Positions 8,316-54,078 of a stretch of DNA of 64,000 nt are shown one piece after another. Each line of letters begins with the position of its first letter. The first letter of the stretch is position 1. Source of the stretch: Selaginella moellendorffii (taxonomy: Eukaryota > Plantae > Lycopodiophyta); the NCBI RefSeq assembly GCF_000143415.4, contig NW_003314267.1:3903201-3967200 (forward strand), read 5' to 3'. The notes under the pieces are model-generated. The model saw nothing but the letters and a program-made list of their open reading frames with translations, was not told the DNA's origin and searched no databases. The position numbers were made by a program, and so were the translations under genes.

Positions 8316-9700
8316 ATGACGGACGAGCAGCGCCTTCACGTAGCGGTGCTCCCAACCACCGGCTCCGGCCACATCAATCCCATGCTCGAGCTCTGCCGTT
8401 GCCTCGTCCCGCTAGGATTCCAGGTAAGCTTCGTCTATCCCAGCAGCCTTCGACACGATGATCTTCACTTCCGAGTGGTGCCAAGCCCAGCCTCGGACAA
8501 GCTTTTGCTCATGGATCCCGCGTTGCAAGAGGACGTGAGACCGGTTCTAGAGGCCCTCCGTCCACCAATAAAGTGCCTTATCGCTGATATGTTCTTAGGC
8601 TGGTCACAGGACGTGGCCGAAAGCCTGGGGATTCCACGAGTAGCCTTCATTCCCAGTGACTCAGTCATCGAAGCGACGTGCTACCATATTCCAGAGCTTG
8701 TCTCCAGGGGTTTCATTACTGGCCATGTTCCTGCCAATGGTGAGAAGAAGAAGAAACTTTACAATTGCTTCATACCGATCGACGAATATGTGTTGTTGTC
8801 TCAGCCGATCCAAATCCGGACGCTTTGATCGACTTCATCCCCGGTCTCGAGCCTTTTACAAGAGAGTTGCTCCCTCTTGCCTTCCAGAACTGGGGACCCA
8901 TTGTGACCACTCTGGGAGTTGCAGCCAGACGAACAAAGGATGCGGTTTGCATTGTCGTCAACACGATTGAGGAGTTGGATCAGGAAGTCGTGAATGGACG
9001 GAGGTTGCTGTTCTCCAGTTATTTACCAGTCGGACCTCTGGTACCTGCAGAGCTTCTGCAAGAACAGCACCCGATCACTCTCAGTTCTCCAAATGACACT
9101 AGCATGATCTGGCTGGACAAACAAGCTTACGGCTCGGTTCTCTATATCGCTTTTGGAAGTGTTGTTACTCTGCCAGCCGACCAAGTGGAGAAGATTGCAA
9201 GAGCTGTAAAAGCCACTCGTCAGCCAGTATTGTGGGCAATCAGGAGGAACTTTGCAAAAGACGTACCTGAGAACTTTTATGAAAGCTTGCAAGAGATAGG
9301 TGGGGAGCAAGCCTGCCTGGTGGTGGAATGGGCTCCACAAGTAAACGTCTTGCGCCACTCCGCGGTTGGAGCCTTCTTAATGCATGGTGGATGGAACTCA
9401 GCTCTAGAAGCCCTGTGCTGTGGAGTACCAATGCTTTGCTGGCCCTGCGCTAACGATCAGAACTTGAATGCTCTCACGATAGTGAAGAAGTGGAGAACTG
9501 GGATAATGGTGGCTCATGGACCCAAAGACGATGTGAGAAGTGAAGACTTGGGAAACGTTATAGATGCTGTGATGAATGGCGAGGAAGGGAGGACGATGAG
9601 GAGCAGAGCTAAAGAACTTAAAAAGATTGTGAGTGTAGGTACTTGCCTGGAGAGAAATCTTCAACAGCTCAAGGATGTGATCATAGCCAAGTCTCAATAG
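8316..9700 (+). CDS. UDP-glycosyltransferase UGT-B1 (exons 8316-8739, 8805-9700)
   Basis: SGHINPM, LIADMF and PSPG WAPQVNVLRHSAVGAFLMHGGWNS...NDQ. Intron 8740-8804. In-frame 24-bp deletion (NLCPKLES) relative to B3/B4, so function is uncertain. Confidence 0.82.
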
Positions 9701-21778: not shown

Positions 21779-23187
21779 ATGGCGGACGAGCAGCGCCTTC
21801 ACGTAGCGGTGCTCCCAACCACCGGCTCCGGCCACATCAATCCCATGCTCGAGCTCTGCCGCCGCCTCGTCCCGCTAGGATTCCAGGTAAGCTTCGTCTA
21901 TCCCAGCAATCTATGCCCCAAGCTGGAGTCGAGCCTTCGACACGATGATCTTCACTTCCAAGTGGTGCCAAGCCCAGCCTCGGACAAGCCTTTGCTCATG
22001 GATCCCGCGTTGCAAGAGGACGTGAGACCGGTTCTAGAGGCCCTCCGTCCACCAGTGAAGTGCCTTATCGCTGATATGTTTTTAGGCTGGTCACAGGACG
22101 TGGCCGACAGCCTGGGGATTCCACGAGTTGCCTTCATTCCCAGTGACTCAGTCATCGAAGCGATGTGCTACCATATTCCAGAGCTTGTCTCCAGGGGTTT
22201 CATTCCTGGCCATGTTCCTGCCAATGGTGAGAAGAAGAAGAAACTTTACAATTGCTTCATACCGATCGACGAATATGTGTTGTTGTCTCAGCCGATCCAA
22301 ATCCGGACGCTTTGATCGACTTCATCCCTGGTCTCGAGCCTTTTACAAGAGAGTTGCTCCCTCTTGCCTTCCAGCACGGGGGACCCATTGTGACCACTGT
22401 GGGAGTTGCAGCCAGACGAACAAAGGATGCGGTTTGCATTGTCGTCAACACGATTGAGGAGTTGGATCAGGAAGTTGTGAATGGACGGAGGTTGCTATTC
22501 TCCAGTTATTTACCAGTCGGACCTCTGGTACCTGCGGAGCTTCTGCAAGAACAGCACCCGATCACTCTCAGTTCTCCAAATGACACTAGCATGATCTGGC
22601 TAGACAAACAAGCTTACCGCTCGGTTCTCTATATCGCTTTTGGCAGTGTTGTTACTCTGCCAGCCGACCAAGTGGAGAAGATTGCAAGAGCTGTAAAAGC
22701 CACTCGTCAGCCAGTCTTGTGGGCGATCAGGAGGAACTTTGCAAAAGACGTACCTGAGAACTTTTATGAAAGCTTGCAAGAGATAGTTGGGGCGCAAGCC
22801 TGCCTGGTGGTGGAATGGGCTCCACAAGTAAACGTCTTGCGCCACTCCGCGGTTGGAGCCTTCTTAATGCACGGTGGATGGAACTCAGCTCTAGAAGCCC
22901 TGTGCTGTGGAGTACCAATGCTTTGCTGGCCCTGCGGTAACGATCAGAACTTGAATGCTCTCACGATAGTGAAGAAGTGGAGAATTGGGATAATGGTGGC
23001 TCATGGACCCAAAGACGATGTGAGAAGCGAAGACTTGGGAAACGTTATAGATGCTGTGATGAACGGCGAGGAAGGGAGGAGGATGAGGAGCAGAGCTCAA
23101 GAACTTAAAAAGATCGTGAGGGCAGGTACTTGCCTGGAGAGAAATCTTCGACAGCTCAAGGATGTGATCATAGCCGCGTCTCAATAG
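21779..23187 (+). CDS. UDP-glycosyltransferase UGT-B3, intact, 447 aa (exons 21779-22226, 22292-23187)
   Basis: Open spliced frame, catalytic His motif and full PSPG box. Confidence 0.93.
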
Positions 23188-26775: not shown

Positions 26776-28184
26776 CTATTGAGACGCGGCTATGATCACA
26801 TCCTTGAGCTGTCGAAGATTTCTCTCCAGGCAAGTACCTGCCCTCACGATCTTTTTAAGTTCTTGAGCTCTGCTCCTCATCCTCCTCCCTTCCTCGCCGT
26901 TCATCACAGCATCTATAACGTTTCCCAAGTCTTCGCTTCTCACATCGTCTTTGGGTCCATGAGCCACCATTATCCCAATTCTCCACTTCTTCACTATCGT
27001 GAGAGCATTCAAGTTCTGATCGTTACCGCAGGGCCAGCAAAGCATTGGTACTCCACAGCACAGGGCTTCTAGAGCTGAGTTCCATCCACCGTGCATTAAG
27101 AAGGCTCCAACCGCGGAGTGGCGCAAGACGTTTACTTGTGGAGCCCATTCCACCACCAGGCAGGCTTGCGCCCCAACTATCTCTTGCAAGCTTTCATAAA
27201 AGTTCTCAGGTACGTCTTTTGCAAAGTTCCTCCTGATCGCCCACAAGACTGGCTGACGAGTGGCTTTTACAGCTCTTGCAATCTTCTCCACTTGGTCGGC
27301 TGGCAGAGTAACAACACTGCCAAAAGCGATATAGAGAACCGAGCGGTAAGCTTGTTTGTCTAGCCAGATCATGCTAGTGTCATTTGGAGAACTGAGAGTG
27401 ATCGGGTGCTGTTCTTGCAGAAGCTCCGCAGGTACCAGAGGTCCGACTGGTAAATAACTGGAGAATAGCAACCTCCGTCCATTCACAACTTCCTGATCCA
27501 ACTCCTCAATCGTGTTGACGACAATGCAAACCGCATCCTTTGTTCGTCTGGCTGCAACTCCCACAGTGGTCACAATGGGTCCCCCGTGCTGGAAGGCAAG
27601 AGGGAGCAACTCTCTTGTAAAAGGCTCGAGACCAGGGATGAAGTCGATCAAAGCGTCCGGATTTGGATCGGCTGAGACAACAACACATATTCGTCGATCG
27701 GTATGAAGCAATTGTAAAGTTTCTTCTTCTTCTCACCATTGGCAGGAACATGGCCAGGAATGAAACCCCTGGAGACAAGCTCTGGAATATGGTAGCACAT
27801 CGCTTCGATGACTGAGTCACTGGGAATGAAGGCAACTCGTGGAATCCCCAGGCTGTCGGCCACGTCCTGTGACCAGCCTAAGAACATATCAGCGATAAGG
27901 CACTTTACTGGTGGACGGAGGGCCTCTAGAACCGGTCTCACGTCCTCTTGCAACGCGGGATCCATGAGCAAAAGCTTGTCCGAGGCTGGGGTTGGCACCA
28001 CTTGGAAGTGAAGATCATCGTGCCGAAGGCTCGACTCCAGCTTGGGGCATAGATTGCTGGGATAGACGAAGCTTACCTGGAATCCTAGCGGGACGAGGCG
28101 GCGACAGAGCTCGAGCATGGGATTGATGTGGCCGGAGCCGGTGGTTGGGAGCACCGCTACGTGAAGGCGCTGCTCGTCCGCCAT
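26776..28184 (-). CDS. UDP-glycosyltransferase UGT-B4, intact, 447 aa (intron 27672-27736)
   Basis: Near-perfect inverted copy of UGT-B3. Exon-2 protein is identical, with two visible aa differences in exon 1. Confidence 0.93.
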
Positions 28185-30229: not shown

Positions 30230-30373
30230 TTGGAGAGAATGGCGATCCCGGCGTGGGCGTCGGTGTCCCCGGGCTTTGTTTTGGAGAGAATGGCGATCCC
30301 GGCGTGGGCGTCGGTGTCCCCGGGCTTTGTTTTGGAGAGAATGGCGATCCCGGCGTGGGCGTCGGTGTCCCCG
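30230..30373 (+). repeat. Triple 51-bp tandem repeat covering the start codon of an IGPS-like pseudogene
   Basis: ttggagagaatggcgatcccggcgtgggcgtcggtgtccccgg(gctttgtt) x3. Confidence 0.92.
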
Positions 30374-31240
30374 GAGGAGCAGCAGCACCATCGGCGCCTC
30401 ACCTTGCTGCTGCGCAGCAAGCAGAGGGTCCTGAAGGCGCCCCTGGCCGCCATGGATGAGCAGGAGCGGCAGCTTCAGTCGCGGCTGGAGGGACTCCAGA
30501 GAATGCCGCCACCCCAGCACCGGCTGCTGCAGAAGATCGTCCGCACGGCAATCGTGGCCGAGGTCGCGCGGGCCTCTCCGGCGGAGAAGCCAGAGGGCGT
30601 TCGGCAAAGGAGCCACGACTATGTTAAAATGGGTATGGTTTTTTCCTTCGCTCTTTCTCTTTGCGATGTAGTGTTTGAGCTGACGCTATCTCGGTTTGCA
30701 CTGACGAAGAAGTGTCGCCAGATGGAGTTTGGATCTAGAAGCTGTTTCTAAAGGTAACGATTCTTCTTTCTTTCTTATCATGTTCTGACATTGGCAAAAT
30801 TTCCTTGAAGTAATTCCTCGGATGTGCAGCGGTGGAGCCGCCAATTCTTCACAAAGATTGGATCATTCATCCGATACAGGTAGCCAATCCACAATTGTGT
30901 ATCGAACACAAAGCTTTGTGTTGCGTAGATAATCGACACTCGGGATCCGGTACTGCTGCTCTTAGGGCCGTCTACTCAGTTCTTTCCAAAGGAACATGTG
31001 TTTCCGCAAGCTCTGTGAAAGCAATCAATCAAACTCTTCGATTTGCAGGAATGCCATCCTTTCTATGCAACATATAGTGACAGCCGGACTTAAACCAGTT
31101 GTGGAGGTGAGCTTTGGGATTCTTTCTCTGAAACCAAATTAAATCTAGGTTCGTCAATCCCAAGGAGTTCAAAGAACTCTCCACTCTCGACAGTCTTCAG
31201 TTTCAACATTTTAGGTGGAGTTGCAGTATGTTGATTGTCG
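30239..31240 (+). pseudogene. IGPS-like pseudogene copy (exons 1-6 only)
   Basis: Homologous to 48822-49790. Acceptor 1 and donor 4 are lost, there is an in-frame stop, and the 3' end is replaced by a PPDK fragment. Confidence 0.85.
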
Positions 31241-36339: not shown

Positions 36340-36925
36340 GGAGTCAAGTTCGGCTGTTGCTCTACGTAGCATAGAGGCGTTCAGGCAAATCGAAGAGATT
36401 GGCTTTCACAGAGCTTGCGGAAACACACGGATCTTTGGAAAGAACTGAGTAGATGGCCGTAAGAGCAGCAGCACCGGATTATCTACGCAACACAAAGCTT
36501 TGTGTTCGATACACAATTGTGGATTGGCTACCTATATCGGATGAATGATCCAATTTTTGCGAAGAACTGGCAGGAATTACTTTGCACAAACTTGAGAAAC
36601 TTTGCCAACATGATAAGAAAGAAAGAAGAATTGCTACCTTTAGAAACAACTTCTAGATCCAAACTCCATCTGGCGATTCTTTGTCGGTTCAAACCAAGAT
36701 AGCGTCAGCTCAAACACTCGAAAGAGCGAAGGAAAAAACCGTACCCCATTTAACATAGTCCTGGCTCCTTTTGGCTTCTCCACGGGAGAAGCCCGCGCGA
36801 CCTCGGCCACAATCGCCGTGCGGACGAGCAGCCGGTGCTGGGGTGGAGCCCCTGCAGACGCAACTGGAGCTGCCGCTCCTGCTCATCCATGGCGGCCAGG
36901 GGTGCCTTCAGGACCCTCTGCTTGC
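36340..36925 (-). pseudogene. IGPS-like pseudogene fragment (inverted)
   Basis: Reverse complement of 48910-49620, with deletions. Confidence 0.8.
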
Positions 36926-37928
36926 CGCGAGCCTGGGAATCCCACGGGGTTATATGCCTGCCAGTGGTAAGGAGAAAAGTTTTGGTTCTGAGAAGAAAGG
37001 AGGATGCTTTACTCGTACCTCTGCGCGTTCTTTCCTCTCTTTCAGGCAACCCCGACCACCAAACTCTGATCGACTTCATTCATTCCACAACTAAAGTGTG
37101 CTCTCCAACTTTTTCTTGCAGGATTTCGAAGAAGTTTTCAGGTGCGTCGCTTGCAAAGTTTCGTCTGATCGCCCACAAGACTGGCTGGTGAGTGGCTTGC
37201 ACAGTTTTAGCGATCTTCTCCACTTGATCAGCCGGGAGGGAGATGACGCTTCCGGAGGTGATGTAGAGAACCAAGCGGTGAGGTTGTTTGTCCAACCAGC
37301 TGATACTGATGTCTTCTTCTGGAGAACTGATAGTTTCGTGCTCTTGCAGAAGCGCCTGAGGTATAAGTGGTCCGACTGGCAGATAGTTGAGAAACTCTTT
37401 CCTGCGCGAAGTCACAAGTTCGTGATCCAGCTCCTCGATGGAGTTGACGAGAACACACGCAGCTTCCTTTGTTTGCTTTGCAGCAGCTCCCAGAAGAAGC
37501 ACAACAGGACCGCCGCGCTGGAAGCCAAGAGGAAGCAGTCTCCTCGGGAAAGGCTCGAGGCCGGGGGCTCCACAAGTGCCTGTCTTGCGCCAGTCAGCAG
37601 TTGGAGCCTTCTTAACGCACTGTGGATGGAACTCGGTGCTAGAGGCCCTGCTCTATGGAGTACCGACACTTTGCTGGCCGTGCGCCTACGAGCAGAACTC
37701 GAATGCTGATATAATGACGGAGAAGTGGAAGCTGGGGTGAAGTTGGCTGATGGACCCGACGATGGTGTCAAATGCGAAGACTTGGAGAAGATCATAGATG
37801 CTGTAATGAATGGCGAAGAAGGAAAAACAATGAGACGCAGAGCCGAAGCTCTCAAGGAGATTGTGAGGAAAAGTGCCTCGAGAAAAACATTCGGCAACTC
37901 AAGAACGTGATTGTAGCCGCTTCTCAGT
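36925..37928 (+). pseudogene. UGT-C pseudogene with internal inversion 37081-37563
   Basis: 5'-truncated copy of UGT-C. The middle segment (PGLE...HTLVVE) is flipped and the flanks stay in + orientation. Confidence 0.88.
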
Positions 37929-38445
37929 AGACAATCTCCAAGCATCGCTGCTCTGGAGAAGCTCCACTCACTTTAACGAAAGTCAGGAAAAAGAAGAGAG
38001 AAAAGAAAAAAGAAAATAAATACCTTTGAGAGGAGCTTCCACATCGATCACTGATCTCGAAGCAGAAACATCGCTGGTCTGGAGAAGAAGCTCCACCCGT
38101 GAAAAATAAAAAATCTAGCACTTTCTACAGAGCTCTCTTACCTTGAAGATTAAGATCGATGAAGAAATCTCCAAACGAACTTCGAAAAGGTGGAACCAAA
38201 GTTAGCGAGATCACACACACACACACAGATGCATACCTTGAGAACAGCTTCCACATCCATTTGGCAATGCCTTGGCAAACGCAACGAATAATCAATGAAT
38301 CGAAAGAACCACTACACTTACCCGGATTTTCGCCAAAGATCTTCGGTCGCCGCCCGGCGCTGCTTTTTCTCGCGTCCACCCCTTGAATCCATGGCCGCTC
38401 CCCTCCTTGGATCCATGGCGCTCCCCCCAAAAACCAAACTTTAAA

Positions 38446-41787: not shown

Positions 41788-42201
41788 CTGCGTGCCTTGG
41801 GTGATGGCGCTTGATCCGGCCACGGAAGGTCCTCCCTGGCAAGGCTCGGCGCCGTCGCCTTGTTTTCGCCGTCGCCTTGTCTTCTTCTGCAGAACTGATA
41901 GTTTCGTGCTCTTGCAGAAGCGCCTGAGGTACGAGTGTGCGTGCCTTGGGTGATGGCGCCCGATCCGGCCACGGAAGGTCCTCCCTGGCAAGGCTCGGCG
42001 CCGTCGCCTTGTCTTCTTCTGGAGAAGTGATAGTTTCGTGCTCTTGCAGAAGCGCCTGAGGTACGAGTGTGCGTGCCTTGGGTGATGGCGCCCGATCCGG
42101 CCACGGAAGGTCCTCCCTGGCAAGGCTCGGCGCCGTCGCCTTGTCTTCTTCTGGAGAAGTGATAGTTTCGTGCTCTTGCAGAAGCGCCTGAGGTACGAGT
42201 G
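41788..42201. repeat. Chimeric 132-bp tandem repeat (x3) of ataxin-10 (+) and UGT-C (-) pieces
   Basis: GGTACGAG recurs at 41928, 42060 and 42192. 44-aa repeat in ORF 41732-42571. Confidence 0.9.
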
Positions 42202-42622
42202 GTCCGACTGGCAGATAGTTGGGAAACTCTTTCCTGCGCGAAGTCACAAGTTCGTGATCCAGCTCCTCGATGGAGTTGACGAGAACACACGCAGCTTCCT
42301 TTGTTCGCTTTGCAGCAGCTCCCAGAAGAAGCACAACAGGACCGCCGCGCTGGAAGCCAAGAGGAAGCAGTCTCCTCGGGAAAGGCTCGAGGCCGGGAAT
42401 GAAGTCGATCAGAGTTTGGTGGTCGGGGTTGCCTGAAAGAGAGGAAAGAACGCGCAGAGGTACGAGTAAAGCATCCTCCTTTCTTCTCAAAACCAAAGCT
42501 TTTCTCCTTACCACTGGCAGGAATATAACCCCGGGACTCGAGCTCTGGGATATGGTAGAGGAGCACCTCATTGATCGCGTGACTGGTGTTTAAGGCGACC
42601 TGTGGGATTCCCAGGCTCGCGG
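42140..42622 (-). pseudogene. UGT-C middle fragment
   Basis: Matches 47920-48403, including the intron. Confidence 0.85.
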
Positions 42623-43210
42623 CAAGCAGAGGGTCCTGAAGGCAGCCCTGGCCGCCATGGATGAGCAGGAGCGGCAGCTCCAGTTGCGGCTGCAGGGGCT
42701 CCAGAGAGTGCCGCCACCCAGCACCGGCTGCTGCAGAAGATCGTCCGCACGGCGATTGTGGCCGAGGTCGCGCGGGCTTCTCCGGTGGAGAAGCCAGAGG
42801 GCGTTGGGCAAAGGAGCCAGGACTATGTTAAATGGGGTACGGTTTTTCCTCAGATGTGTAGCGGTGGAGGTGCCAGTTCTTCGTAAAAAATTGGATCATT
42901 CATCCGATACAGGTAGCCAATCCACAATTGTGCATCGAACACAAAGCTTTGTGTTGCGTAGATAATCTGGTGCTGCTGCTCTTACGGTCATCTACTCAGT
43001 TCTTCGTGTGTTTCCGCAAGCTCTGTGAAAGCCAAACTCTTCTATAGGAACGCCTCTACGCTACGTATAGCGACAGCCGAATTTGACCCAGTTGTGGAGG
43101 TGAGCTGTGGGATTCTTTCTCTGAAACCAAACCAAATTCAGGTTCGTCAATCTCAAAAAGCTTGAGTAACTCTCCCATTTCAGTTGGACTTGCAATGCGT
43201 TGATTGACAT
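42622..43210 (+). pseudogene. IGPS-like pseudogene fragment
   Basis: Matches exon 1 (3' part) and exons 3-6 of 48822-50108, with deletions. Confidence 0.8.
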
Positions 43211-47322: not shown

Positions 47323-48727
47323 CTACTGAGAAGCGGCTACAATCACGTTCTTGAGTTGCCGAATGTTTCTCTCGAGGCCAGTACTTTTCCTCACAATCTC
47401 CTTGAGAGCTTCGGCTCTGCGTCTCATTGTTTTTCCTTCTTCGCCATTCATTACAGCATCTATGATCTTCTCCAAGTCTTCGCATTTGACACCATCGTCG
47501 GGTCCATCAGCCAACTTCACCCCAGTCTTCCACTTCTCCGTCATTACATGAGCATTCGAGTTCTGCTCGTAGGCGCACGGCCAGCAAAGTGTTGGTACTC
47601 CACAGAGCAGGGCCTCTAGCACCGAGTTCCATCCACAGTGCGTTAAGAAGGCTCCAACTGCGGACTGGCGCAAGACAGGCACTTGTGGAGCCCATTCCAC
47701 AACTAAACTGTGCTCTCCAACTTTTTCTTGCAGGCTTTCGAAGAAGTTTTCAGGTGCGTCGCTTGCAAAGTTTCGTCTGATCGCCCACAAGACTGGCTGG
47801 TGAGTGGCTTGCACAGCTTTAGCGATCTTCTCCACTTGATCAGCCGGGAGGGAGATGACGCTTCCGAAGGCGATGTAGAGAACCGAGCGGTGAGGTTGTT
47901 TGTCCAACCAGCTGATACTAGTGTCTTCTTCTGGAGAACTGATAGTTTCGTGCTCTTGCAGAAGCGCCGGAGGTACGAGTGGTCCGACTGGCAGATAGTT
48001 GGGAAACTCTTTCCTGCGCGAAGTCACAAGTTCGTGATCCAGCTCCTCGATGGAGTTGACGAGAACACACGCAGCTTCCTTTGTTCGCTTTGCAGCAGCT
48101 CCCAGAAGAAGCACAACAGGACCGCCGCGCTGGAAGCCAAGAGGAAGCAGTCTCCTCGGGAAAGGCTCGAGGCCGGGAATGAAGTCGATCAGAGTTTGGT
48201 GGTCGGGGTTGCCTGAAAGAGAGGAAAGGACGCGCAGAGGTATGAGTAAAACATCCTCCTTTCTTCTCAAAACCAAAACTTTAGTTCTTACCACTGGCAG
48301 GAATATAACCCCGGGACTCGAGCTCTGGGATATGGTAGAAGAGCACCTCATTGATCGCGTGACTGGTGTTTAAGGCGATCTGTGGGATTCCCAGGCTCGC
48401 GGCGACGTCCTGTGACCAGCCCAAGAAGAAATCAGAGATTAGGCACTTCACCGGTGGTCGGAGGGCCTCTAGAACCGCTTTCACTTCCTCTTGGAGCTCT
48501 GCAGCTCTGATAAGTGACACGTCCGTGGGTGGGCTCGGCACCAGATCGATGTGGAGGTCATCTTCCCGCAGGCTCGACTCCACCTTGGAGCACAGATTCC
48601 TGGGAAGAACAAAGCTTACGTGAAATCCCAGCGGGACGAGGCGGCGGCAAAGCTCGAGCATGGGATTGATGTGGCCGGATCCATCGCAGGGAAGCGCTGC
48701 TATGTGAAGACGCTGCTCGTCTGCCAT
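47323..48727 (-). CDS. UDP-glycosyltransferase UGT-C, intact, 441 aa (intron 48213-48291)
   Basis: MADEQRLHIAALPCDGSGHINPM, LISDFF and [31 protein letters not shown]. Paralog of UGT-B. Confidence 0.93.
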
Positions 48728-48821
48728 CGCCAAAGCAAAGACTAAAGATCCAGAGAGGGTTGTTGACTATTGACTATTTGACTGGTGTTTTCTTTTTTGG
48801 GTGAATTTAGGGCTCTTGCGA

Positions 48822-50108
48822 ATGGCGATCCCGGCGTGGCGGATTTGCCTAGCGTCGGCGTCCCCGGAGGAGCAGCAGCACCAGCGGCGCCTCACCTCGC
48901 TGCTGCGCAACAAGCAGCGGGCCCTGGAGGCGCGCCTGGCCGCTATGGATGAGCAGGAGCGGCAGCTCCAGTCGCGGCTGCAGGGACTCCAGAGATTGCC
49001 GCCGCCCCAGCACCGGTTGCTGCAGAAGATCGTCGCCAGCACAATGCAGGGCCGCACGGCGATCGTGGCCGAGGTCGCGCGGGCCTCTCCGGCGGAGAAG
49101 CCAGAGGGCGTTGCGCAAAGGAGCCAGGACTATGTTACATGGGGTATGGATTCTTTTCGTTCTCTCCTTTTCTTTGCGGCGTGATTCGAGTGTTTGCTTC
49201 CTTGTCCAGGAGCTGACGCCATCTCGGTTTGCACTGACGAAGAAGTATCGCCAGATGGAGTTTTGGATCTGGAAGCTGTTTCTAAAGGTAGCGATTCTTC
49301 TTTCTTTCTTACTATGTTGTGTTCTCCTTGACATTGGTTTCCTAAGTTTGTGCGAAGTAATTCCTCGGATGTGCAGCGGTGGAGGTCCCAGTTCTTCGCA
49401 AAGATTGGATCATTCATCCGATACAGGTAGCCAATCCATAATTGTGTATCGAGCACAAAGCTTTGTTTTGCATAGATAATCGATACTCGGGAATCCGGTG
49501 CTGCTGCTCTCACGGCCGTCTACTCAGTTCTTTCCAAAGGTACGTGTGTTTCTGCAAGCTCTTAAAAAAATCAAACTCTTCGATTTGCAGGAACGCCATC
49601 CATTCTACGCTACATAGCTACAGTTGGACTTGATGCAGTTGTGGAGGTGAGCTCCTTTCTTTCTCTGAAACCAAGACTAAATTAGAAATTTCCAGGTCGT
49701 CAATCTCAAAGAACTCGAGGAACTCTCCACACTCGGCATCCCGCTCTTTGGTTTCAACATCTCAGTTGGAGTTGCAGTGCGTTGATTGACATAATTTTTG
49801 CTCTCTTGCCATCAGTATCAACCTCTTTCCCTTCTCCTACAGGTTCCAATACCAGGCTTTCGGCAGGACATCGCCAAGTCTCTGGTTCAAAAGCTCCCCT
49901 TTGGAGCCGCGTCCATTGTGGTGAGTTTTAGCCCTCTCCTCGCGCGTCAACTCAGCTTTTTCTTCTCGTCCAGGGCGTTGCTTCGATGGAGGAGGCACGG
50001 CAGATGAAGGTGGCGGGGGCGGACGCCGTCTACCTGAAAAGAGAGGCTCTAAGTTCGCCGCAAGAGCTACTCGAAAGCTTGCGAGAAGGATTGAGTGGAG
50101 ACGACTAG
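48822..50108 (+). CDS. Indole-3-glycerol-phosphate-synthase-like TIM-barrel protein, 287 aa, 8 exons (48822-49143, 49210-49287, 49377-49426, 49476-49539, 49591-49646, 49696-49776, 49843-49920, 49974-50108)
   Basis: Manual splicing gives an open frame with IVAEVARASP, GADAISVCTD, VPVLRKDWIIHPIQ, GLDAVVEV, LFGFN and GADAVYL. Confidence 0.85.
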
Positions 50109-50215
50109 AAAAACAAATAAACAGCAGTCATTTACAATCACGGTTCACGCAGATTATTTACAGTATGTATAGTTTTTAGTGTCAGTAGAGTTTCATGAAT
50201 GGATTCCTTGCGATT

Positions 50216-53200
50216 CTACTTCTTGGTAGCTGCCTGTGCAGCAGCGAGTCTCGCAATTGGCACTCTACATCAAACAAAAGTTTGCATTAGAATTCTTTCC
50301 TTTTCTTTCTCTCTTTCTTACCTGAAAGGCGAGCACGAAACGTAGTCTAGACCCGCGTCATGGAAGAACTCTACGGACATGGGCTCCCCGCCGTGCTCTC
50401 CACAAACTCCTACCTGATGTTACACAGGCGGTCAGCCATGAATCACACAACTTAGCTCGTTTCACCTTCAAACCATCCCTGGCTTTTCTGCCTCGCTCGG
50501 TCGCAATGCTGATAAGTTGGCCGACGCCTCTCTGGTCAAGAACCTGAGATCCGGAAGAACAAAAAAGTATAAGAAAAGCCTCGTGAAACGTCATGCGTGC
50601 ACCTCGAATGGATCATGCTGTAGAATGCCTTGCGAGAGGTAGACGGGTAAGAACTTGCTCACGTCGTCTCGGCTATAGCCAAACGTCATTTGCGTCAGGT
50701 CGTTGGTGCCGAAAGAGAAAAACTCCGCGTGTGATGCAATCTAGCGTGTCACCGAATTAAGCAAACAAAACCACGGGAGATTCTGTTACCTCGTCTGCAA
50801 CGAGTGCTGCCCGAGGGATTTCGATCATAGTTCCAATCTTGTATGGCAGGCTTTTGCCAACGTCCGAGAAGACTCTTTCCGCTACACCGTGGATTGCAGA
50901 AACTTGGTTTCCGAGTTCCTGTATACAGGATAATCGTGAAAAAACATTAGCTTGCACAAAAACTCGACGAACCTGAGGAGTCCCCACAAGAGGAACCATT
51001 ATTTCAGGGTAGACTTTAACACCTTGATTGGACATTGCTATAGCCGCTTCGAAGATGGCACGAGCTTGCATTTCTGTAAGCTCCGGATACGAAACTCCCA
51101 GCCTGAGAACATCTAACGTAGAATCTCCACTAAAACTCTCATGTTTGAAATATACCTGCAGCCTCGGAAACCGAGCATCGGGTTCACCTCGGACAACTTT
51201 TCAACTCGAAGTAGAACATCTTCCTCGCGGACACCAGTTTCCGCAGCAAGCTCTTCCACAATCTCGTCAATGTCACCTTCGGGAAGGAACTCGTGTAATG
51301 GAGGATCAAGCAAACGTATGGTGACCGGAAGTCCTGCATTCTTGTTGGCAAGAAACACAGGTTAGTGACTAAAACTACCAAGCTTCGCACTTTACCATCC
51401 ATGACGCGAAAAATTCCTTCAAAGTCTGATCGTTGGTATGGTAGAAGCTTGTCCAGAGCTGCTTGCCTGTGTTCGAGAGTGGATGCCATGATCATCTGCC
51501 TCACAGCCTTGATCCTCTCATCTGAAGCAAAGAACTGAACGCGCATGGATAGCTCGAGAAAAGAGCATAAGAGAGCTCACGTACCATGTGTTCTGTTCTG
51601 CACAATCCGATACCTTGAGCACCGTTGTTTCTAGCAGTGAGCGCATCCGCAGGAGTATCGGCATTGGCCATAACCTGAACGCATGTCCATGTTTAATTGT
51701 GCATCTTTACTTCTCATACCTTGAGCTTCCGATAATCATCAACCCAGCGCATGAGAGTCTCAAGATCACCACTAAGTACCGGAGGTGACAAATCCTGCCT
51801 TCCCACAATAACCTCGCCCGTTGTCCCATTCAACGAAATCCAGTCACCTTCTTTCAGTACCGTGTTTCCCAGCGACATTGTCTGTAAAGTACGTTTCAAA
51901 ACCAGAACGCTTGGCACTCTTTACCTTCTGTGCGTCGTTCACTCGAAGCTCCGAGCATCCAGCAACACAGCACTTTCCCCAGCCTCGGGCAACAACAGCA
52001 GCATGAGACGTCATCCCTCCGCGTGCAGTAAGAATGCCGGCGGCAGCATTCATGCCTCCAACGTCTTCTGGACTCGTCTCGTTTCTTACCTGAAAAGGAT
52101 TAAAGATCACTAGACAGATAAATGACGCTGCGTGAAGAATACCAGAATACAGCTTTTCCCTTGAGCATGCCAGGCTTCTGCATCTTCGGCACTGAAAACG
52201 AGTTGCCCGACTGCGGCACCAGGTGAAGCAGGAAGACCAGAACCTATGACATAATCTTTGTATGCAGCAGGATTCTCGAACTGTAGACGGAAAACGAAGG
52301 AATTGTGAAGGAGAGAAACAAATCTTTCTACCTGAGGATGAAGGAGCTGGTCCAGGTGTCTAGGCTCGACCATGTTCACAGCGGTTTTGGTGTCCACAAG
52401 CTTTTCGCCAACCATGTCGACAGCAATCTTTACCGCTCCAGCACCAGTTCGTTTCCCGGAGCGGCACTGCAGCATCCACAACCTGTTTGATTGAACAGTG
52501 AATTCGATGTCCTGAACATCACCAGGAGAATTATTAGAACATGGCATATATATACTGCGTCCTAACCATCATATCCTTGTAGTGGTTTTCCAGTATTTCA
52601 CAGTTCTTCACAAGCTCCGCATAAGCACCAGGCAAGCGTTCTTTCATAACATCAATATCCTCCGGCGTCCTGATCCCAGCCACAACGTCCTCTCCCTGCA
52701 GCCATCATACTTTCAAAGTCATCATAGATGCAACTATAGATTAAAAACCTGTGCGTTAATCAGGTACTCGCCATAGAGCTTCCTTTCCCCAGTGCTAGGA
52801 TTGCGAGTAAACAGCACCCCAGTACCCGAGTCAAGTCCCATATTTCCAAAAACCATAGCTTGGACATTAACAGCCGTGCCTCGCAAACCACTGATTTGGT
52901 TGATATTGCGATACTTGATGGCACGAGGACTGTTCCACGACTCGAAGACAGCCACAATGGCAAGCTTAAGTTGCTCTTTTGGATCTGCTTAGACAAGAAG
53001 GCCTGTCAATAAAAGCATAAGAAGACAAATACATACCAGAAGGAAACTCTTTGCCAGTTGCTTTAGAGTAAACCGCCTTGTATTTCTCAACAAGCTCTTT
53101 AAGATCCTCCGTGGTGAGGTCCGTGTCAAGCGTTGTCCCTCTCGCAGCCTTCATCGTTTCCAGCTCATGCTCAAACAGTGAATGCGGAATATTCATCACC

Positions 53201-54078
53201 TGCAACTTAAAGTAAGGACCTTTCCAGAGACGGCATACATATGACTTACCACATCACCAAACATGTCGAGGAAGCGACGATAAGAATCATACGCAAATCT
53301 CTCGCCGCTTATCTGGCCTAGGCCGGCAGCAACCTCGTCGTTGAGCCCCAGATTTAACACCGTGTCCATCATTCCCGGCATTGACACCTGCATTTCATAC
53401 AGTCAACACTAACACCACCCTGCAGAACCGAGAAAGAATAAAAGCTAGAAACACTAACCGCAGCACCTGACCGTACAGAAACCAGCAGTGGCGCAGTGGG
53501 ATTTCCCAGCGAAGCATTCATTTCTCGCTCCACAACGCTGAGTGCAGCTAGAACTTCCTCCCACAGGCCAGAAGGGAATTTCTTTCCGTTGTCAAAGTAG
53601 TCGTGACAGGTTTCTGTGGTGATGGTAAGTCCCGGAGGTACAGACAGGCCTATGCTCGACATTTCTGCGAGGTTTGCACCTTTGCCACCAAGCTGAGAGG
53701 ATAAGAACAGCGATCATACATTTCAAGATAAGGAGAAACTATTATTTTTTTACCAGAGACTTCATGCTCTTGTCCCCTTGACTGAGCCCCTTCCCGAATG
53801 TATAAACACGCTGGGGCTGATGCTGGTGTAACTCAAGCTGTGTGAGCTGCTGCTGCCCCTGATCGCAAAACAAAAACAGTGATCACGTCCACAAAAACTT
53901 AATTTTGTACCTGAACTGCGAAAACTTGAGCTCTTCCAGCTGAAACTTTGTAGCTCGTCTTCGCTATCCTTGTCTGAAGCAAGGGACGCTGCTCGTTGCC
54001 ATAAAAAGCCGCTGCAACAGCGGCCTTGTGCTGCTGCTGCATAATTGAAGCGAACATCATCTTACTGGCACAAGCCAT
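50216..54078 (-). CDS. PPDK: Pyruvate, orthophosphate dikinase (multi-exon, N-terminal transit-peptide-like region)
   Basis: [33 protein letters not shown] (regulatory Thr and catalytic His), [36 protein letters not shown]. Confidence 0.96.

What the first reader, a model, noticed from the sequence alone, without database searches (positions are those of the whole stretch)
48822..50108. IGPS-like pseudoenzyme or neofunctionalised TIM barrel missing the catalytic Lys and phosphate-binding motifs
Seen: this intact 8-exon gene is mostly missed by the ORF track. Against canonical TrpC (S. solfataricus numbering), E51, K110 (LRKD), E159 (VVEV) and N180 appear kept. K53 is replaced (AEVARASP versus AEVKxASP), R182 is lost (FNIS), and the ESG motif is absent (SIVGVAS). 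The phosphate-binding VG[ES] is replaced (GADAVYLKRE). The N-terminus has a coiled-coil-like Q/E/R/L stretch. Inference: it cannot run the normal CdRP-to-IGP reaction and may bind a non-phosphorylated ligand or act as a regulator or scaffold.
Basis: partly seen in the sequence, partly recalled or inferred. Interest (0 to 1): 0.75.

Follow-up and report, generated by a model that had tools for sequence, protein, structure and literature searches.

The report
Green-lineage IGPS-like barrel, rebuilt active site
This is a real, spliced and transcribed spikemoss (Selaginella moellendorffii) gene for a protein with the fold of the tryptophan-pathway enzyme IGPS; several residues needed for that reaction were replaced long ago and the replacements are conserved from green algae to ferns, so it almost certainly has a different, still unknown job.

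Summary
An 8-exon, 287-aa gene lies at 48822-50108 (+). RNA-derived contigs from four studies show all seven GT-AG introns spliced as modelled. NCBI's S. moellendorffii model LOC112346816 (P0038) has the same length and differs at 3 residues.

It is a true IGPS-fold protein: Pfam IGPS 91 bits, AlphaFold pLDDT 92, best structural matches are IGPS. It fails every NCBIfam TrpC equivalog cut-off.

Residue mapping:
- Kept: E51, K110, D111, E159, N180, G212.
- Changed: K53 to Ala, R182 to Ser, E210/S211 to Ile/Val, G233/S234 to Lys/Arg.

These changes are not local decay. They define a monophyletic family running from chlorophytes through streptophyte algae, bryophytes and Selaginella to ferns, with no seed-plant hit. 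In it K53 is never Lys and K110 is Lys in only 8 of 31 members. A polar catalytic face is invariant. dN/dS is 0.11-0.29.

So it is not an IGPS and not a pseudogene. It is most likely a neofunctionalised ligand-binding or catalytic barrel of unknown substrate. The "coiled coil" is the normal IGPS N-terminal helices, and "non-phosphorylated ligand" is unsupported. The closest described analogue is apicomplexan AMR1.

The scan noted the same gene on another piece of this genome (s1-420851). Three decayed partial copies lie in the window.

The parts
48822..49143 (+). Exon 1. It holds the start codon, the N-terminal helices (IGPS alpha0/alpha00 equivalent) and strand beta1 with E84-V-A86-R87 (E51, K53 to Ala, R54).
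   Evidence: junction 49143/49210 in 4 runs; Pfam IGPS 16.7 bits on the exon alone; no in-frame upstream ATG; an in-frame stop lies 18 codons upstream.
49210..49287 (+). Exon 2. It holds beta2 and the invariant T-D117-E-E119 loop.
49347..49376 (+). Alternative 5' extension of exon 3, from an alternative acceptor at 49346/49347. The 30 nt carry an in-frame TAA, giving a stop at codon 138, so this isoform is probably non-productive.
   Evidence: (a 59-nt skip seen in X1, X3 and X6; the 89-nt skip seen in X3 and X8).
49377..49426 (+). Exon 3. It holds beta3 with L-R-K142-D143-W144 (K110, D111, F112 to W), plus H147, P148 and Q150.
49476..49539 (+). Exon 4, holding beta4.
49591..49646 (+). Exon 5. 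It holds beta5 and ends in E190 (E159).
49696..49776 (+). Exon 6. It holds V192 and N193 (H161 to V) and beta6 with G-F-N211-I-S213 (N180 kept, R182 to Ser).
   Evidence: (junction 49776/49843 in 4 runs).
49843..49920 (+). Exon 7. It holds alpha6 and the start of beta7, where I242/V243 stand in place of E210/S211.
49974..50108 (+). Exon 8. It holds G244 (G212 kept), beta8 followed by K265-R266-E267 in place of G233-S234, the family's C-terminal G-D-D and the stop codon.
30341..31225 (+). Decayed partial copy A. It covers exons 1-6 at about 81% identity, with a 30-nt deletion in exon 1 and frame-breaking indels in exons 2, 4, 5 and 6. Exons 7-8 are missing.
   Evidence: Its exon-1 part corresponds to the 138-aa NCBI model P0001.
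36433..36924 (-). Decayed partial copy B. It covers exon 1 (from nt 90) to exon 4, with many deletions.
42623..43175 (+). Decayed partial copy C. It covers exon 1 from nt 90, lacks exon 2 and has partial exons 3-6.

Best explanation
The gene is the single intact, expressed Selaginella copy of an old paralogue family of indole-3-glycerol-phosphate synthase, found across the green lineage.

Shown:
- The protein keeps the whole IGPS architecture, that is the N-terminal helices plus a complete (beta-alpha)8 barrel.
- It keeps a subset of the polar residues at the mouth of the barrel (E51, R54, D111, Q118, E159, N180, G212).
- The family replaced residues that IGPS chemistry needs (K53, E210, and K110 in most members).
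- It lost the CdRP carboxylate and aromatic pocket residues (R182, F89; F112 became W).
- It lost the Gly-Ser phosphate clamp after beta8, which is now Lys/Arg followed by Arg/His/Lys.
- It gained its own invariant residues (H147, N193, W144).

Inferred: it no longer makes IGP. It uses the remodelled, still strongly conserved pocket to bind, and probably to transform, a different small and probably anionic metabolite. The substrate and the reaction are unknown.

Algal and bryophyte members carry a 40-113-residue N-terminal presequence that looks organellar. Selaginella and fern members lack it, so the compartment may have changed in vascular plants (inferred).
For: - Gene structure and expression.
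- Homology and fold: Pfam IGPS 91.1 bits on the allele P0038. AF2 gives pLDDT 92.3 and pTM 0.90 with eight strands. The Foldseek top hits are all IGPS, with TM up to 0.82 by target. hhalign probability is 99.9%.
- Not TrpC: all NCBIfam equivalog cut-offs are failed, 90.5 bits against 284, whereas a bacterial TrpC control passes at 302 against 260.
- Family-wide substitution pattern.
- Mutant data: K53A and E210A equivalents are dead and K110R loses more than 2700-fold (PMC10591298).
- Ancient vertical family: hits in ferns, Selaginella, Sphagnum, liverworts, Klebsormidium, Mesotaenium and chlorophytes. The family forms one clade with SH-aLRT 100, and its internal order follows the species tree.
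- Purifying selection: omega is 0.11 (12 synonymous nucleotide differences against 4 nonsynonymous ones in 3 codons between the two Selaginella alleles) and 0.16-0.29 among ferns.
- Invariant residues are enriched at strand C-ends and the following loops (10 of 18; odds ratio 2.9, p 0.03).
- Duplicates in the same window have decayed while this copy stayed intact.
- Precedent: the IGPS-like proteins PfAMR1 and two Vitrella paralogues lack key residues, did not complement trpC, and PfAMR1 is essential (PMC6380595; PMC8022201).
Against: - No ligand, activity or localisation was measured or can be computed here.
- The enrichment of invariant residues on the catalytic face is modest, and a non-catalytic binder would show it too.
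- K110 varies freely and no obvious replacement acid or base was identified.
- The PTC-containing isoform is the one assembled in two of the four runs, so part of the transcript pool is non-productive.
Confidence: 0.6

Rival explanations
1. It is a non-catalytic pseudoenzyme. The barrel is kept as a ligand sensor, regulator or scaffold, for example a partner of canonical tryptophan-pathway or other plastid enzymes, and the conserved pocket serves only binding or protein contacts.
For: - Two to three residues essential for the parent reaction are gone, and the K110 position is unconstrained (K/R/W/T/A/S).
- No new candidate catalytic acid was identified.
- The strictly conserved extreme C-terminal G-D-D (25 of 31 members) and the conserved N-terminal helices (K31, L39, L53) could be interaction surfaces.
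Against: - The invariant polar cluster sits exactly at the catalytic face (E84, R87, D117, D143, H147, E190, N193, N211).
- Ferns lost G-D-D yet remain under purifying selection.
- The IGPS scaffold readily supports other chemistries: retro-aldolases and Kemp eliminases built on it are among the structural hits.
Confidence: 0.27
2. It is still a bona fide IGPS that achieves the reaction with a different set of residues, for example R87, K265 or R266 substituting for K53.
For: - E51, K110, E159 and N180 are present in the Selaginella protein.
- Databases name several relatives 'indole-3-glycerol-phosphate synthase'.
Against: - K53A and E210A equivalents are inactive in MtIGPS.
- K110 is not conserved among orthologues, and R182, F89 and the phosphate clamp are lost.
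- All TrpC equivalog thresholds are failed.
- A long stem branch separates the family from TrpC.
- The analogous IGPS-like proteins did not complement trpC.
Confidence: 0.04
3. It is a lineage-specific decaying duplicate (a young pseudogene that is still transcribed), and the substitutions are neutral damage.
For: - The window contains three decayed fragments of the same gene.
- One splice isoform carries a premature stop.
Against: - The reading frame and all splice sites are intact.
- The same substitutions occur in 31 orthologues from chlorophytes to ferns.
- Omega is 0.11-0.29.
- Exon divergence between the alleles is 1.9%, against about 5% in the introns.
Confidence: 0.02

Closest known systems
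Indole-3-glycerol-phosphate synthase (TrpC; Pfam PF00218), e.g. S. solfataricus 1IGS/1A53, M. tuberculosis 3QJA, T. thermophilus 1VC4
   Same: It has the same domain family (91 bits) and the same fold, including the N-terminal helical extension (TM up to 0.82; 25-27% identity). E51, R54, S56/P57, D111, Q118, E159, N180 and G212 are retained, and K110 is retained in the Selaginella protein.
   Different: K53 is Ala, R182 is Ser, E210/S211 are Ile/Val and G233/S234 are Lys/Arg. F89 is Ser/Thr, F112 is Trp and H161 is Val. It fails all NCBIfam TrpC equivalog cut-offs, sits in a separate clade on a long stem, and has a family-specific C-terminal G-D-D.
Apicomplexan/chromerid 'IGPS-like' proteins (PfAMR1, PF3D7_1363700, and two Vitrella brassicaformis paralogues; PMC6380595, PMC8022201)
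   Same: These are also IGPS-derived TIM barrels in plastid-bearing eukaryotes with key functional residues not conserved. They are retained independently of tryptophan synthesis and did not complement trpC. The concept of a neofunctionalised IGPS paralogue is the same.
   Different: [quoted passage not shown] The Selaginella protein is compact and has no presequence. Orthology between the green family and AMR1 was not tested, because no AMR1 sequence was within reach of the tools. AMR1's biochemical function is itself unknown.
Engineered enzymes on the IGPS scaffold (retro-aldolases RA95, Kemp eliminases KE59/1A53 designs)
   Same: They use the same barrel with a rebuilt pocket and appear among the best sequence and structure matches. 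They show that the scaffold supports unrelated chemistry.
   Different: They are artificial, so they have no evolutionary relation to this natural family's substitutions.
[quoted passage not shown]
   Same: The name only.
   Different: According to 10.1101/2020.10.12.336560, TaTGW-7A is a UPF0261/TIM-br_sig_trns protein that is not homologous to IGPS. It is not related to this family.

Membership tests
Pfam PF00218 IGPS domain family | Score at or above the gathering cut-off (27 bits) | tested here: met
   P0038, the NCBI allele with 3 aa differences, scores 91.1 bits at E 8e-26. Orthologues score 64-80 bits. Exon 1 of the window alone scores 16.7 bits, below the cut-off. The joined window model itself was not submitted.
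IGPS fold | (beta-alpha)8 barrel preceded by the N-terminal alpha0/alpha00 helices | tested here: met
   The AF2 model has pLDDT 92.3, eight strands and N-terminal helices. The Foldseek top 50 are all IGPS or IGPS-derived designs. Atlas matches cover residues 17-287.
TrpC equivalog (NCBIfam NF001369-NF001378 and related models) | Whole-protein score at or above the curated equivalog cut-off | tested here: not met
   The best score is 90.5 bits against a cut-off of 284. The control bacterial TrpC P0069 scores 302 against 260.
Catalytically competent IGPS | Lys53 (SsIGPS numbering), the proposed acid of the dehydration step | tested here: not met
   It is Ala86 here. Across 31 family members it is A/S/T/C/G/V and never K. 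The K-to-A mutant of MtIGPS is inactive.
Catalytically competent IGPS | Lys110, the general acid of ring closure | tested here: met
   It is K142 in the window protein. However, it is Lys in only 8 of 31 orthologues and R/W/T/A/S in the rest, so it is not under IGPS-type constraint.
Catalytically competent IGPS | Glu51, Glu159 and Asn180 | tested here: met
   They are E84, E190 and N211, invariant in the family.
Catalytically competent IGPS | Glu210 (of the Glu51/Glu210/Lys110 triad) and Arg182 (binds the CdRP carboxylate) | tested here: not met
   E210 is Ile242, with no acidic residue anywhere on beta7. R182 is Ser213.
Catalytically competent IGPS | Phosphate clamp formed by G212, G233 and S234 | tested here: not met
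   G212 is kept as G244, but G233/S234 are K265/R266. Across the family these positions are K/R/T followed by R/H/K. Whether phosphate can still bind is unknown.
Catalytically competent IGPS | Converts CdRP to IGP, or complements trpC | not testable with these tools
   This needs an enzyme assay or E. coli trpC complementation.
AMR1-type IGPS-like proteins | IGPS homologue with key functional residues not conserved | tested here: met
   The definition comes from PMC6380595.
AMR1-type IGPS-like proteins | Common descent with PfAMR1 and the Vitrella IGPS-like proteins | not tested
   No AMR1 or Vitrella sequence could be fetched by reference. The nearest Atlas clusters by features are diatom 'putative IGPS' clusters of 351-400 aa, which is only a lead.
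AMR1-type IGPS-like proteins | Plastid targeting | tested here: inconclusive
   Algal and bryophyte members have presequences of 40-113 aa rich in S/T/R/K. Selaginella and ferns have none. There is no in-frame upstream ATG and no upstream exon in the RNA contigs. No targeting predictor was available.

The most novel reading that the evidence does not exclude
The green-lineage family and apicomplexan/chromerid AMR1 descend from one ancient duplication of IGPS in a plastid-bearing ancestor. On this reading they encode an undiscovered enzyme activity needed for plastid biology. That activity was kept in algae, bryophytes, lycophytes and ferns, was lost in seed plants, and was possibly re-localised to the cytosol in vascular plants. 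Tractable green models such as Chlamydomonas, Marchantia and Physcomitrium could then reveal the chemistry of an essential malaria-parasite protein.
Probability: 0.15. Interest if true: 0.8.

Novelty: new variant of a known kind. Interest (0 to 1): 0.55.

Why it matters
IGPS is a textbook TIM-barrel enzyme and a favourite design scaffold, yet natural repurposing of it has been described only for the apicomplexan protein AMR1, whose function is still unknown. This finding shows a second natural IGPS-derived family, or possibly the same one. It has a coherent and strongly conserved set of active-site replacements, spans roughly the whole green lineage short of seed plants, and is under purifying selection.

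Databases label its members 'IGPS', 'IGPS-like' or 'uncharacterized'. Metabolic reconstructions of algae, bryophytes, lycophytes and ferns may therefore count a tryptophan-pathway enzyme that is not one.

The family offers a defined question: which ligand fits a pocket with E, D, H, E, N, N plus two new basic residues? It also offers genetically tractable organisms in which to answer it.

Tried and rejected
- Exon-by-exon Pfam scan. Only exon 1 gave a sub-threshold IGPS hit and the short exons gave nothing, so family membership had to be shown through the database allele P0038.
- PDB search with exon 1. It returned only weak hits to designed coiled coils. I rejected these as compositional, because the helix aligns to the IGPS N-terminal extension.
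- Joined spliced model. I built it only inside scripts, for translation, comparison with P0038, dN/dS and the tree. P0038, which differs at 3 residues, stood in for it in the Pfam, NCBIfam, PDB, AlphaFold and Atlas runs.
- Protein Atlas by features and by shape. Both returned only generic IGPS clusters. The diatom clusters are a lead, not evidence.
- Literature searches for a described green-lineage IGPS-like family. Only the AMR1 papers were relevant, and the cereal 'IGPS-like' genes are a name collision.
- Contigs of P0067 and P0056. They come from metagenome records with no organism label, so it stays open whether the family reaches beyond Viridiplantae.
- Origin of the duplication. I could not obtain a canonical plant or cyanobacterial IGPS, or any AMR1 sequence, so the tree is rooted only on bacterial TrpC-like hits and the origin is unresolved.

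Full report
1. THE OBSERVATION

Reading 48300-50700 and assembling exons by GT-AG rules gives an 8-exon gene on the + strand. The exons are 48822-49143, 49210-49287, 49377-49426, 49476-49539, 49591-49646, 49696-49776, 49843-49920 and 49974-50108. The CDS is 864 nt (287 aa) and the introns are 49-89 nt.

The model is confirmed in two independent ways.
- Contigs of four runs from four different studies, which hold about 55-60% of the sampled words of the locus (roughly the exonic share), skip exactly the seven predicted introns.
- A profile search returned 'uncharacterized protein LOC112346816 [Selaginella moellendorffii]' (P0038, 287 aa). It differs from my translation only at A34I, V183A and A257S.

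P0038's locus lies in GCA_000143415.2 (scaffold GL377582.1). It has the same neighbours as the window: a UDP-glycosyltransferase head-to-head, and pyruvate,phosphate dikinase tail-to-tail. The window is therefore S. moellendorffii, most likely the other haplotype or another assembly. The scan noted the same gene on another piece of this genome (s1-420851).

2. WHAT IT IS

Exon by exon, only exon 1 gives a weak IGPS hit (16.7 bits). The allele P0038 scores 91.1 bits on Pfam IGPS against a cut-off of 27. Full-length orthologues score 64-80 bits.

AlphaFold2 on a 46-sequence alignment gives pLDDT 92.3 and pTM 0.90, with eight strands alternating with helices and three N-terminal helices. All top Foldseek hits in the PDB are IGPS or designs built on IGPS, with TM up to 0.82 by target and 25-27% identity. 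The Atlas shape search agrees. The Q/E/R/L-rich N-terminus aligns to the start of the IGPS profile and is the usual alpha0/alpha00 lid, not a coiled-coil domain. The coiled-coil hits of exon 1 in the PDB are compositional.

3. THE ACTIVE SITE

Three kinds of alignment give the same map in SsIGPS numbering: phmmer to solved IGPS structures, MAFFT with 15 TrpC-like sequences, and hhalign of family against TrpC (probability 99.9%).

Kept in the window protein:
- E51 = E84
- R54 = R87
- K110 = K142
- D111 = D143
- Q118 = Q150
- E159 = E190
- N180 = N211
- G212 = G244

Changed in the window protein:
- K53 = A86
- F89 = Ser
- F112 = W144
- H161 = V192
- R182 = S213
- E210/S211 = I242/V243
- G233/S234 = K265/R266

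K53 became Ala and the neighbouring Arg is the normal R54. G212 survives. The beta8 clamp was replaced by two basic residues.

In M. tuberculosis IGPS the Ala mutants of the K53 and E210 equivalents have no detectable activity, and the K110-equivalent Arg mutant loses more than 2700-fold (PMC10591298).

Against NCBIfam the protein reaches 90.5 bits where the TrpC equivalog models demand 258-414. A bacterial TrpC control passes.

4. NOT A LOCAL ACCIDENT

An exhaustive HMMER search with exon 1, two word-index searches and one profile search recover a family in these groups:
- ferns (Adiantum, Ceratopteris)
- Selaginella
- Sphagnum
- liverworts (Riccia, Calypogeia)
- Klebsormidium
- Mesotaenium
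- chlorophytes (Trebouxia, Monoraphidium, Chlamydomonas eustigma)
- unlabelled transcriptome and metagenome contigs

No seed-plant protein appeared, although the database is rich in them. This suggests loss in seed plants but does not prove it, because the index scores only the 8000 best candidates.

In a maximum-likelihood tree the 33 family rows form one clade (SH-aLRT 100) on a long stem from 14 bacterial TrpC-like sequences. The internal order is chlorophytes, then streptophyte algae, then embryophytes, with the embryophytes supported at 99. That order fits vertical descent.

Across 31 members:
- K53 is never Lys, and F89 is always Ser/Thr.
- K110 is Lys in only 8.
- R182 and E210 are always gone.
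- G233 is K/R/T and position 234 is mostly R/H/K.
- E51, R54, D111, Q118, E159, N180 and G212 are invariant.

The invariant set also includes family-specific H147 and N193, with W144 near-invariant. Ten of the 18 invariant residues sit at strand C-ends or the loops that follow them (odds ratio 2.9, p 0.03).

5. SELECTION AND EXPRESSION

Between the window and the NCBI allele, the exons differ at 16 of 864 nt (12 synonymous nucleotide differences, and 4 nonsynonymous ones in 3 codons). The introns differ at about 5%. Nei-Gojobori gives dN 0.006 and dS 0.057, so omega is 0.11. Four fern cDNAs give omega 0.16-0.29.

Transcripts are spliced in all four runs. An alternative acceptor at 49346/49347 adds 30 nt with an in-frame TAA, giving a stop at codon 138. 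This isoform is the one assembled in two runs and is present in a third, so part of the message pool is probably non-productive.

6. SURROUNDINGS

The window carries three decayed fragments of the same gene: 30341-31225 (+), 36433-36924 (-) and 42623-43175 (+). They have deletions, frameshifts and missing exons. The exon-1 part of the first fragment is annotated as a 138-aa protein in the NCBI assembly (P0001). These fragments are interleaved with a repeated UGT gene. Only the copy under study is intact.

Its start codon is 94 nt from the divergent UGT start. There is no in-frame upstream ATG, and no upstream exon appears in the RNA contigs.

Algal and bryophyte orthologues carry 40-113 extra N-terminal residues rich in Ser/Thr/Arg/Lys. 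Selaginella and ferns do not.

Twenty-five of 31 members, including this one, end in exactly G-D-D. Ferns have lost this ending.

7. MECHANISM

Shown:
- an IGPS fold
- an intact and conserved polar pocket
- loss of residues required for IGP synthesis and for holding the carboxyphenyl and phosphate ends of CdRP in the canonical way
- purifying selection
- expression

Inferred:
- The protein does not make IGP.
- The pocket binds a different and more polar ligand. The aromatic pocket residues became Ser/Thr, and two basic residues replace the Gly-Ser clamp, so an anionic group such as a phosphate, carboxylate or sulfate remains plausible.
- Catalysis is somewhat more likely than pure binding.

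I put 0.6 on this reading. I put 0.27 on a non-catalytic regulator or scaffold, 0.04 on a still-functional IGPS and 0.02 on neutral decay.

8. COMPARISON WITH WHAT IS KNOWN

At domain and fold level this is a member of the IGPS family. It is not a TrpC equivalog.

The only described natural parallel I found is the 'IGPS-like' group of Tang et al. (PMC6380595). It comprises PfAMR1 and two Vitrella paralogues that lack key residues and did not complement trpC. PfAMR1 is essential for apicoplast biogenesis and is still of unknown biochemistry (PMC8022201). Whether the green family is orthologous to AMR1 could not be tested.

The cereal 'IGPS-like' genes are unrelated to this family.

I found no paper describing the green-lineage family.

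9. LIMITS

- The joined window model was used only inside scripts. All external searches used exon references or the allele P0038.
- The tree contains no canonical plant or cyanobacterial IGPS.
- No targeting prediction was possible.
- The RNA evidence comes from assembled contigs, so it shows presence and splicing but not level or strand.

Noticed in passing
window 30341-31225 (+), 36433-36924 (-), 42623-43175 (+): There are three decayed partial copies of the IGPS-like gene, 71-85% identical, with frameshifts, deletions and missing exons. The exon-1 part of the first copy is annotated as a 138-aa protein (P0001) in GCA_000143415.2, and that model is probably a pseudogene fragment.
   Followed up: partly
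window 47323-48733 (-); also about 21779-23187, 26776-28184, 8316-9700, 37081-37953 and 42142-42623: This is a repeated UDP-glycosyltransferase (PF00201) gene array. The copy next to the IGPS-like gene is head-to-head with it, with start codons only 94 nt apart, and RNA contigs run across the gap. Near-identical (about 97%) UGT fragments flank the decayed IGPS-like copies, which indicates recent segmental duplication and rearrangement. The order of segments differs from the NCBI scaffold.
   Followed up: partly
window 49347-49376: An alternative 3' splice site of intron 2 adds 30 nt with an in-frame TAA, giving a stop at codon 138. This isoform is the one assembled in runs X1 and X6, both isoforms occur in X3, and only the productive one occurs in X8. 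It may be unproductive splicing or NMD-type regulation.
   Followed up: partly
window about 50200-54000 (-): A pyruvate,phosphate dikinase gene lies convergent with the IGPS-like gene. RNA contigs join the 3' end of one to the 3' exons of the other, so the 3' UTRs probably overlap or abut. One minus-strand intron is seen at 50412-50463.
   Followed up: no
family alignment A4; window 50097-50105 encodes G-D-D: An extreme C-terminal Gly-Asp-Asp is conserved in 25 of 31 family members from chlorophytes to Selaginella. All six fern sequences have lost it. Its role is unknown.
   Followed up: partly
family members P0012, P0014, P0019, P0024-P0027 against the window protein and the ferns: Algal and bryophyte orthologues have a 40-113-aa presequence rich in Ser/Thr/Arg/Lys, which looks like a transit peptide. 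Selaginella and fern proteins start about 20 residues before the first conserved helix. This suggests a change of compartment in vascular plants.
   Followed up: partly
   Followed up: no
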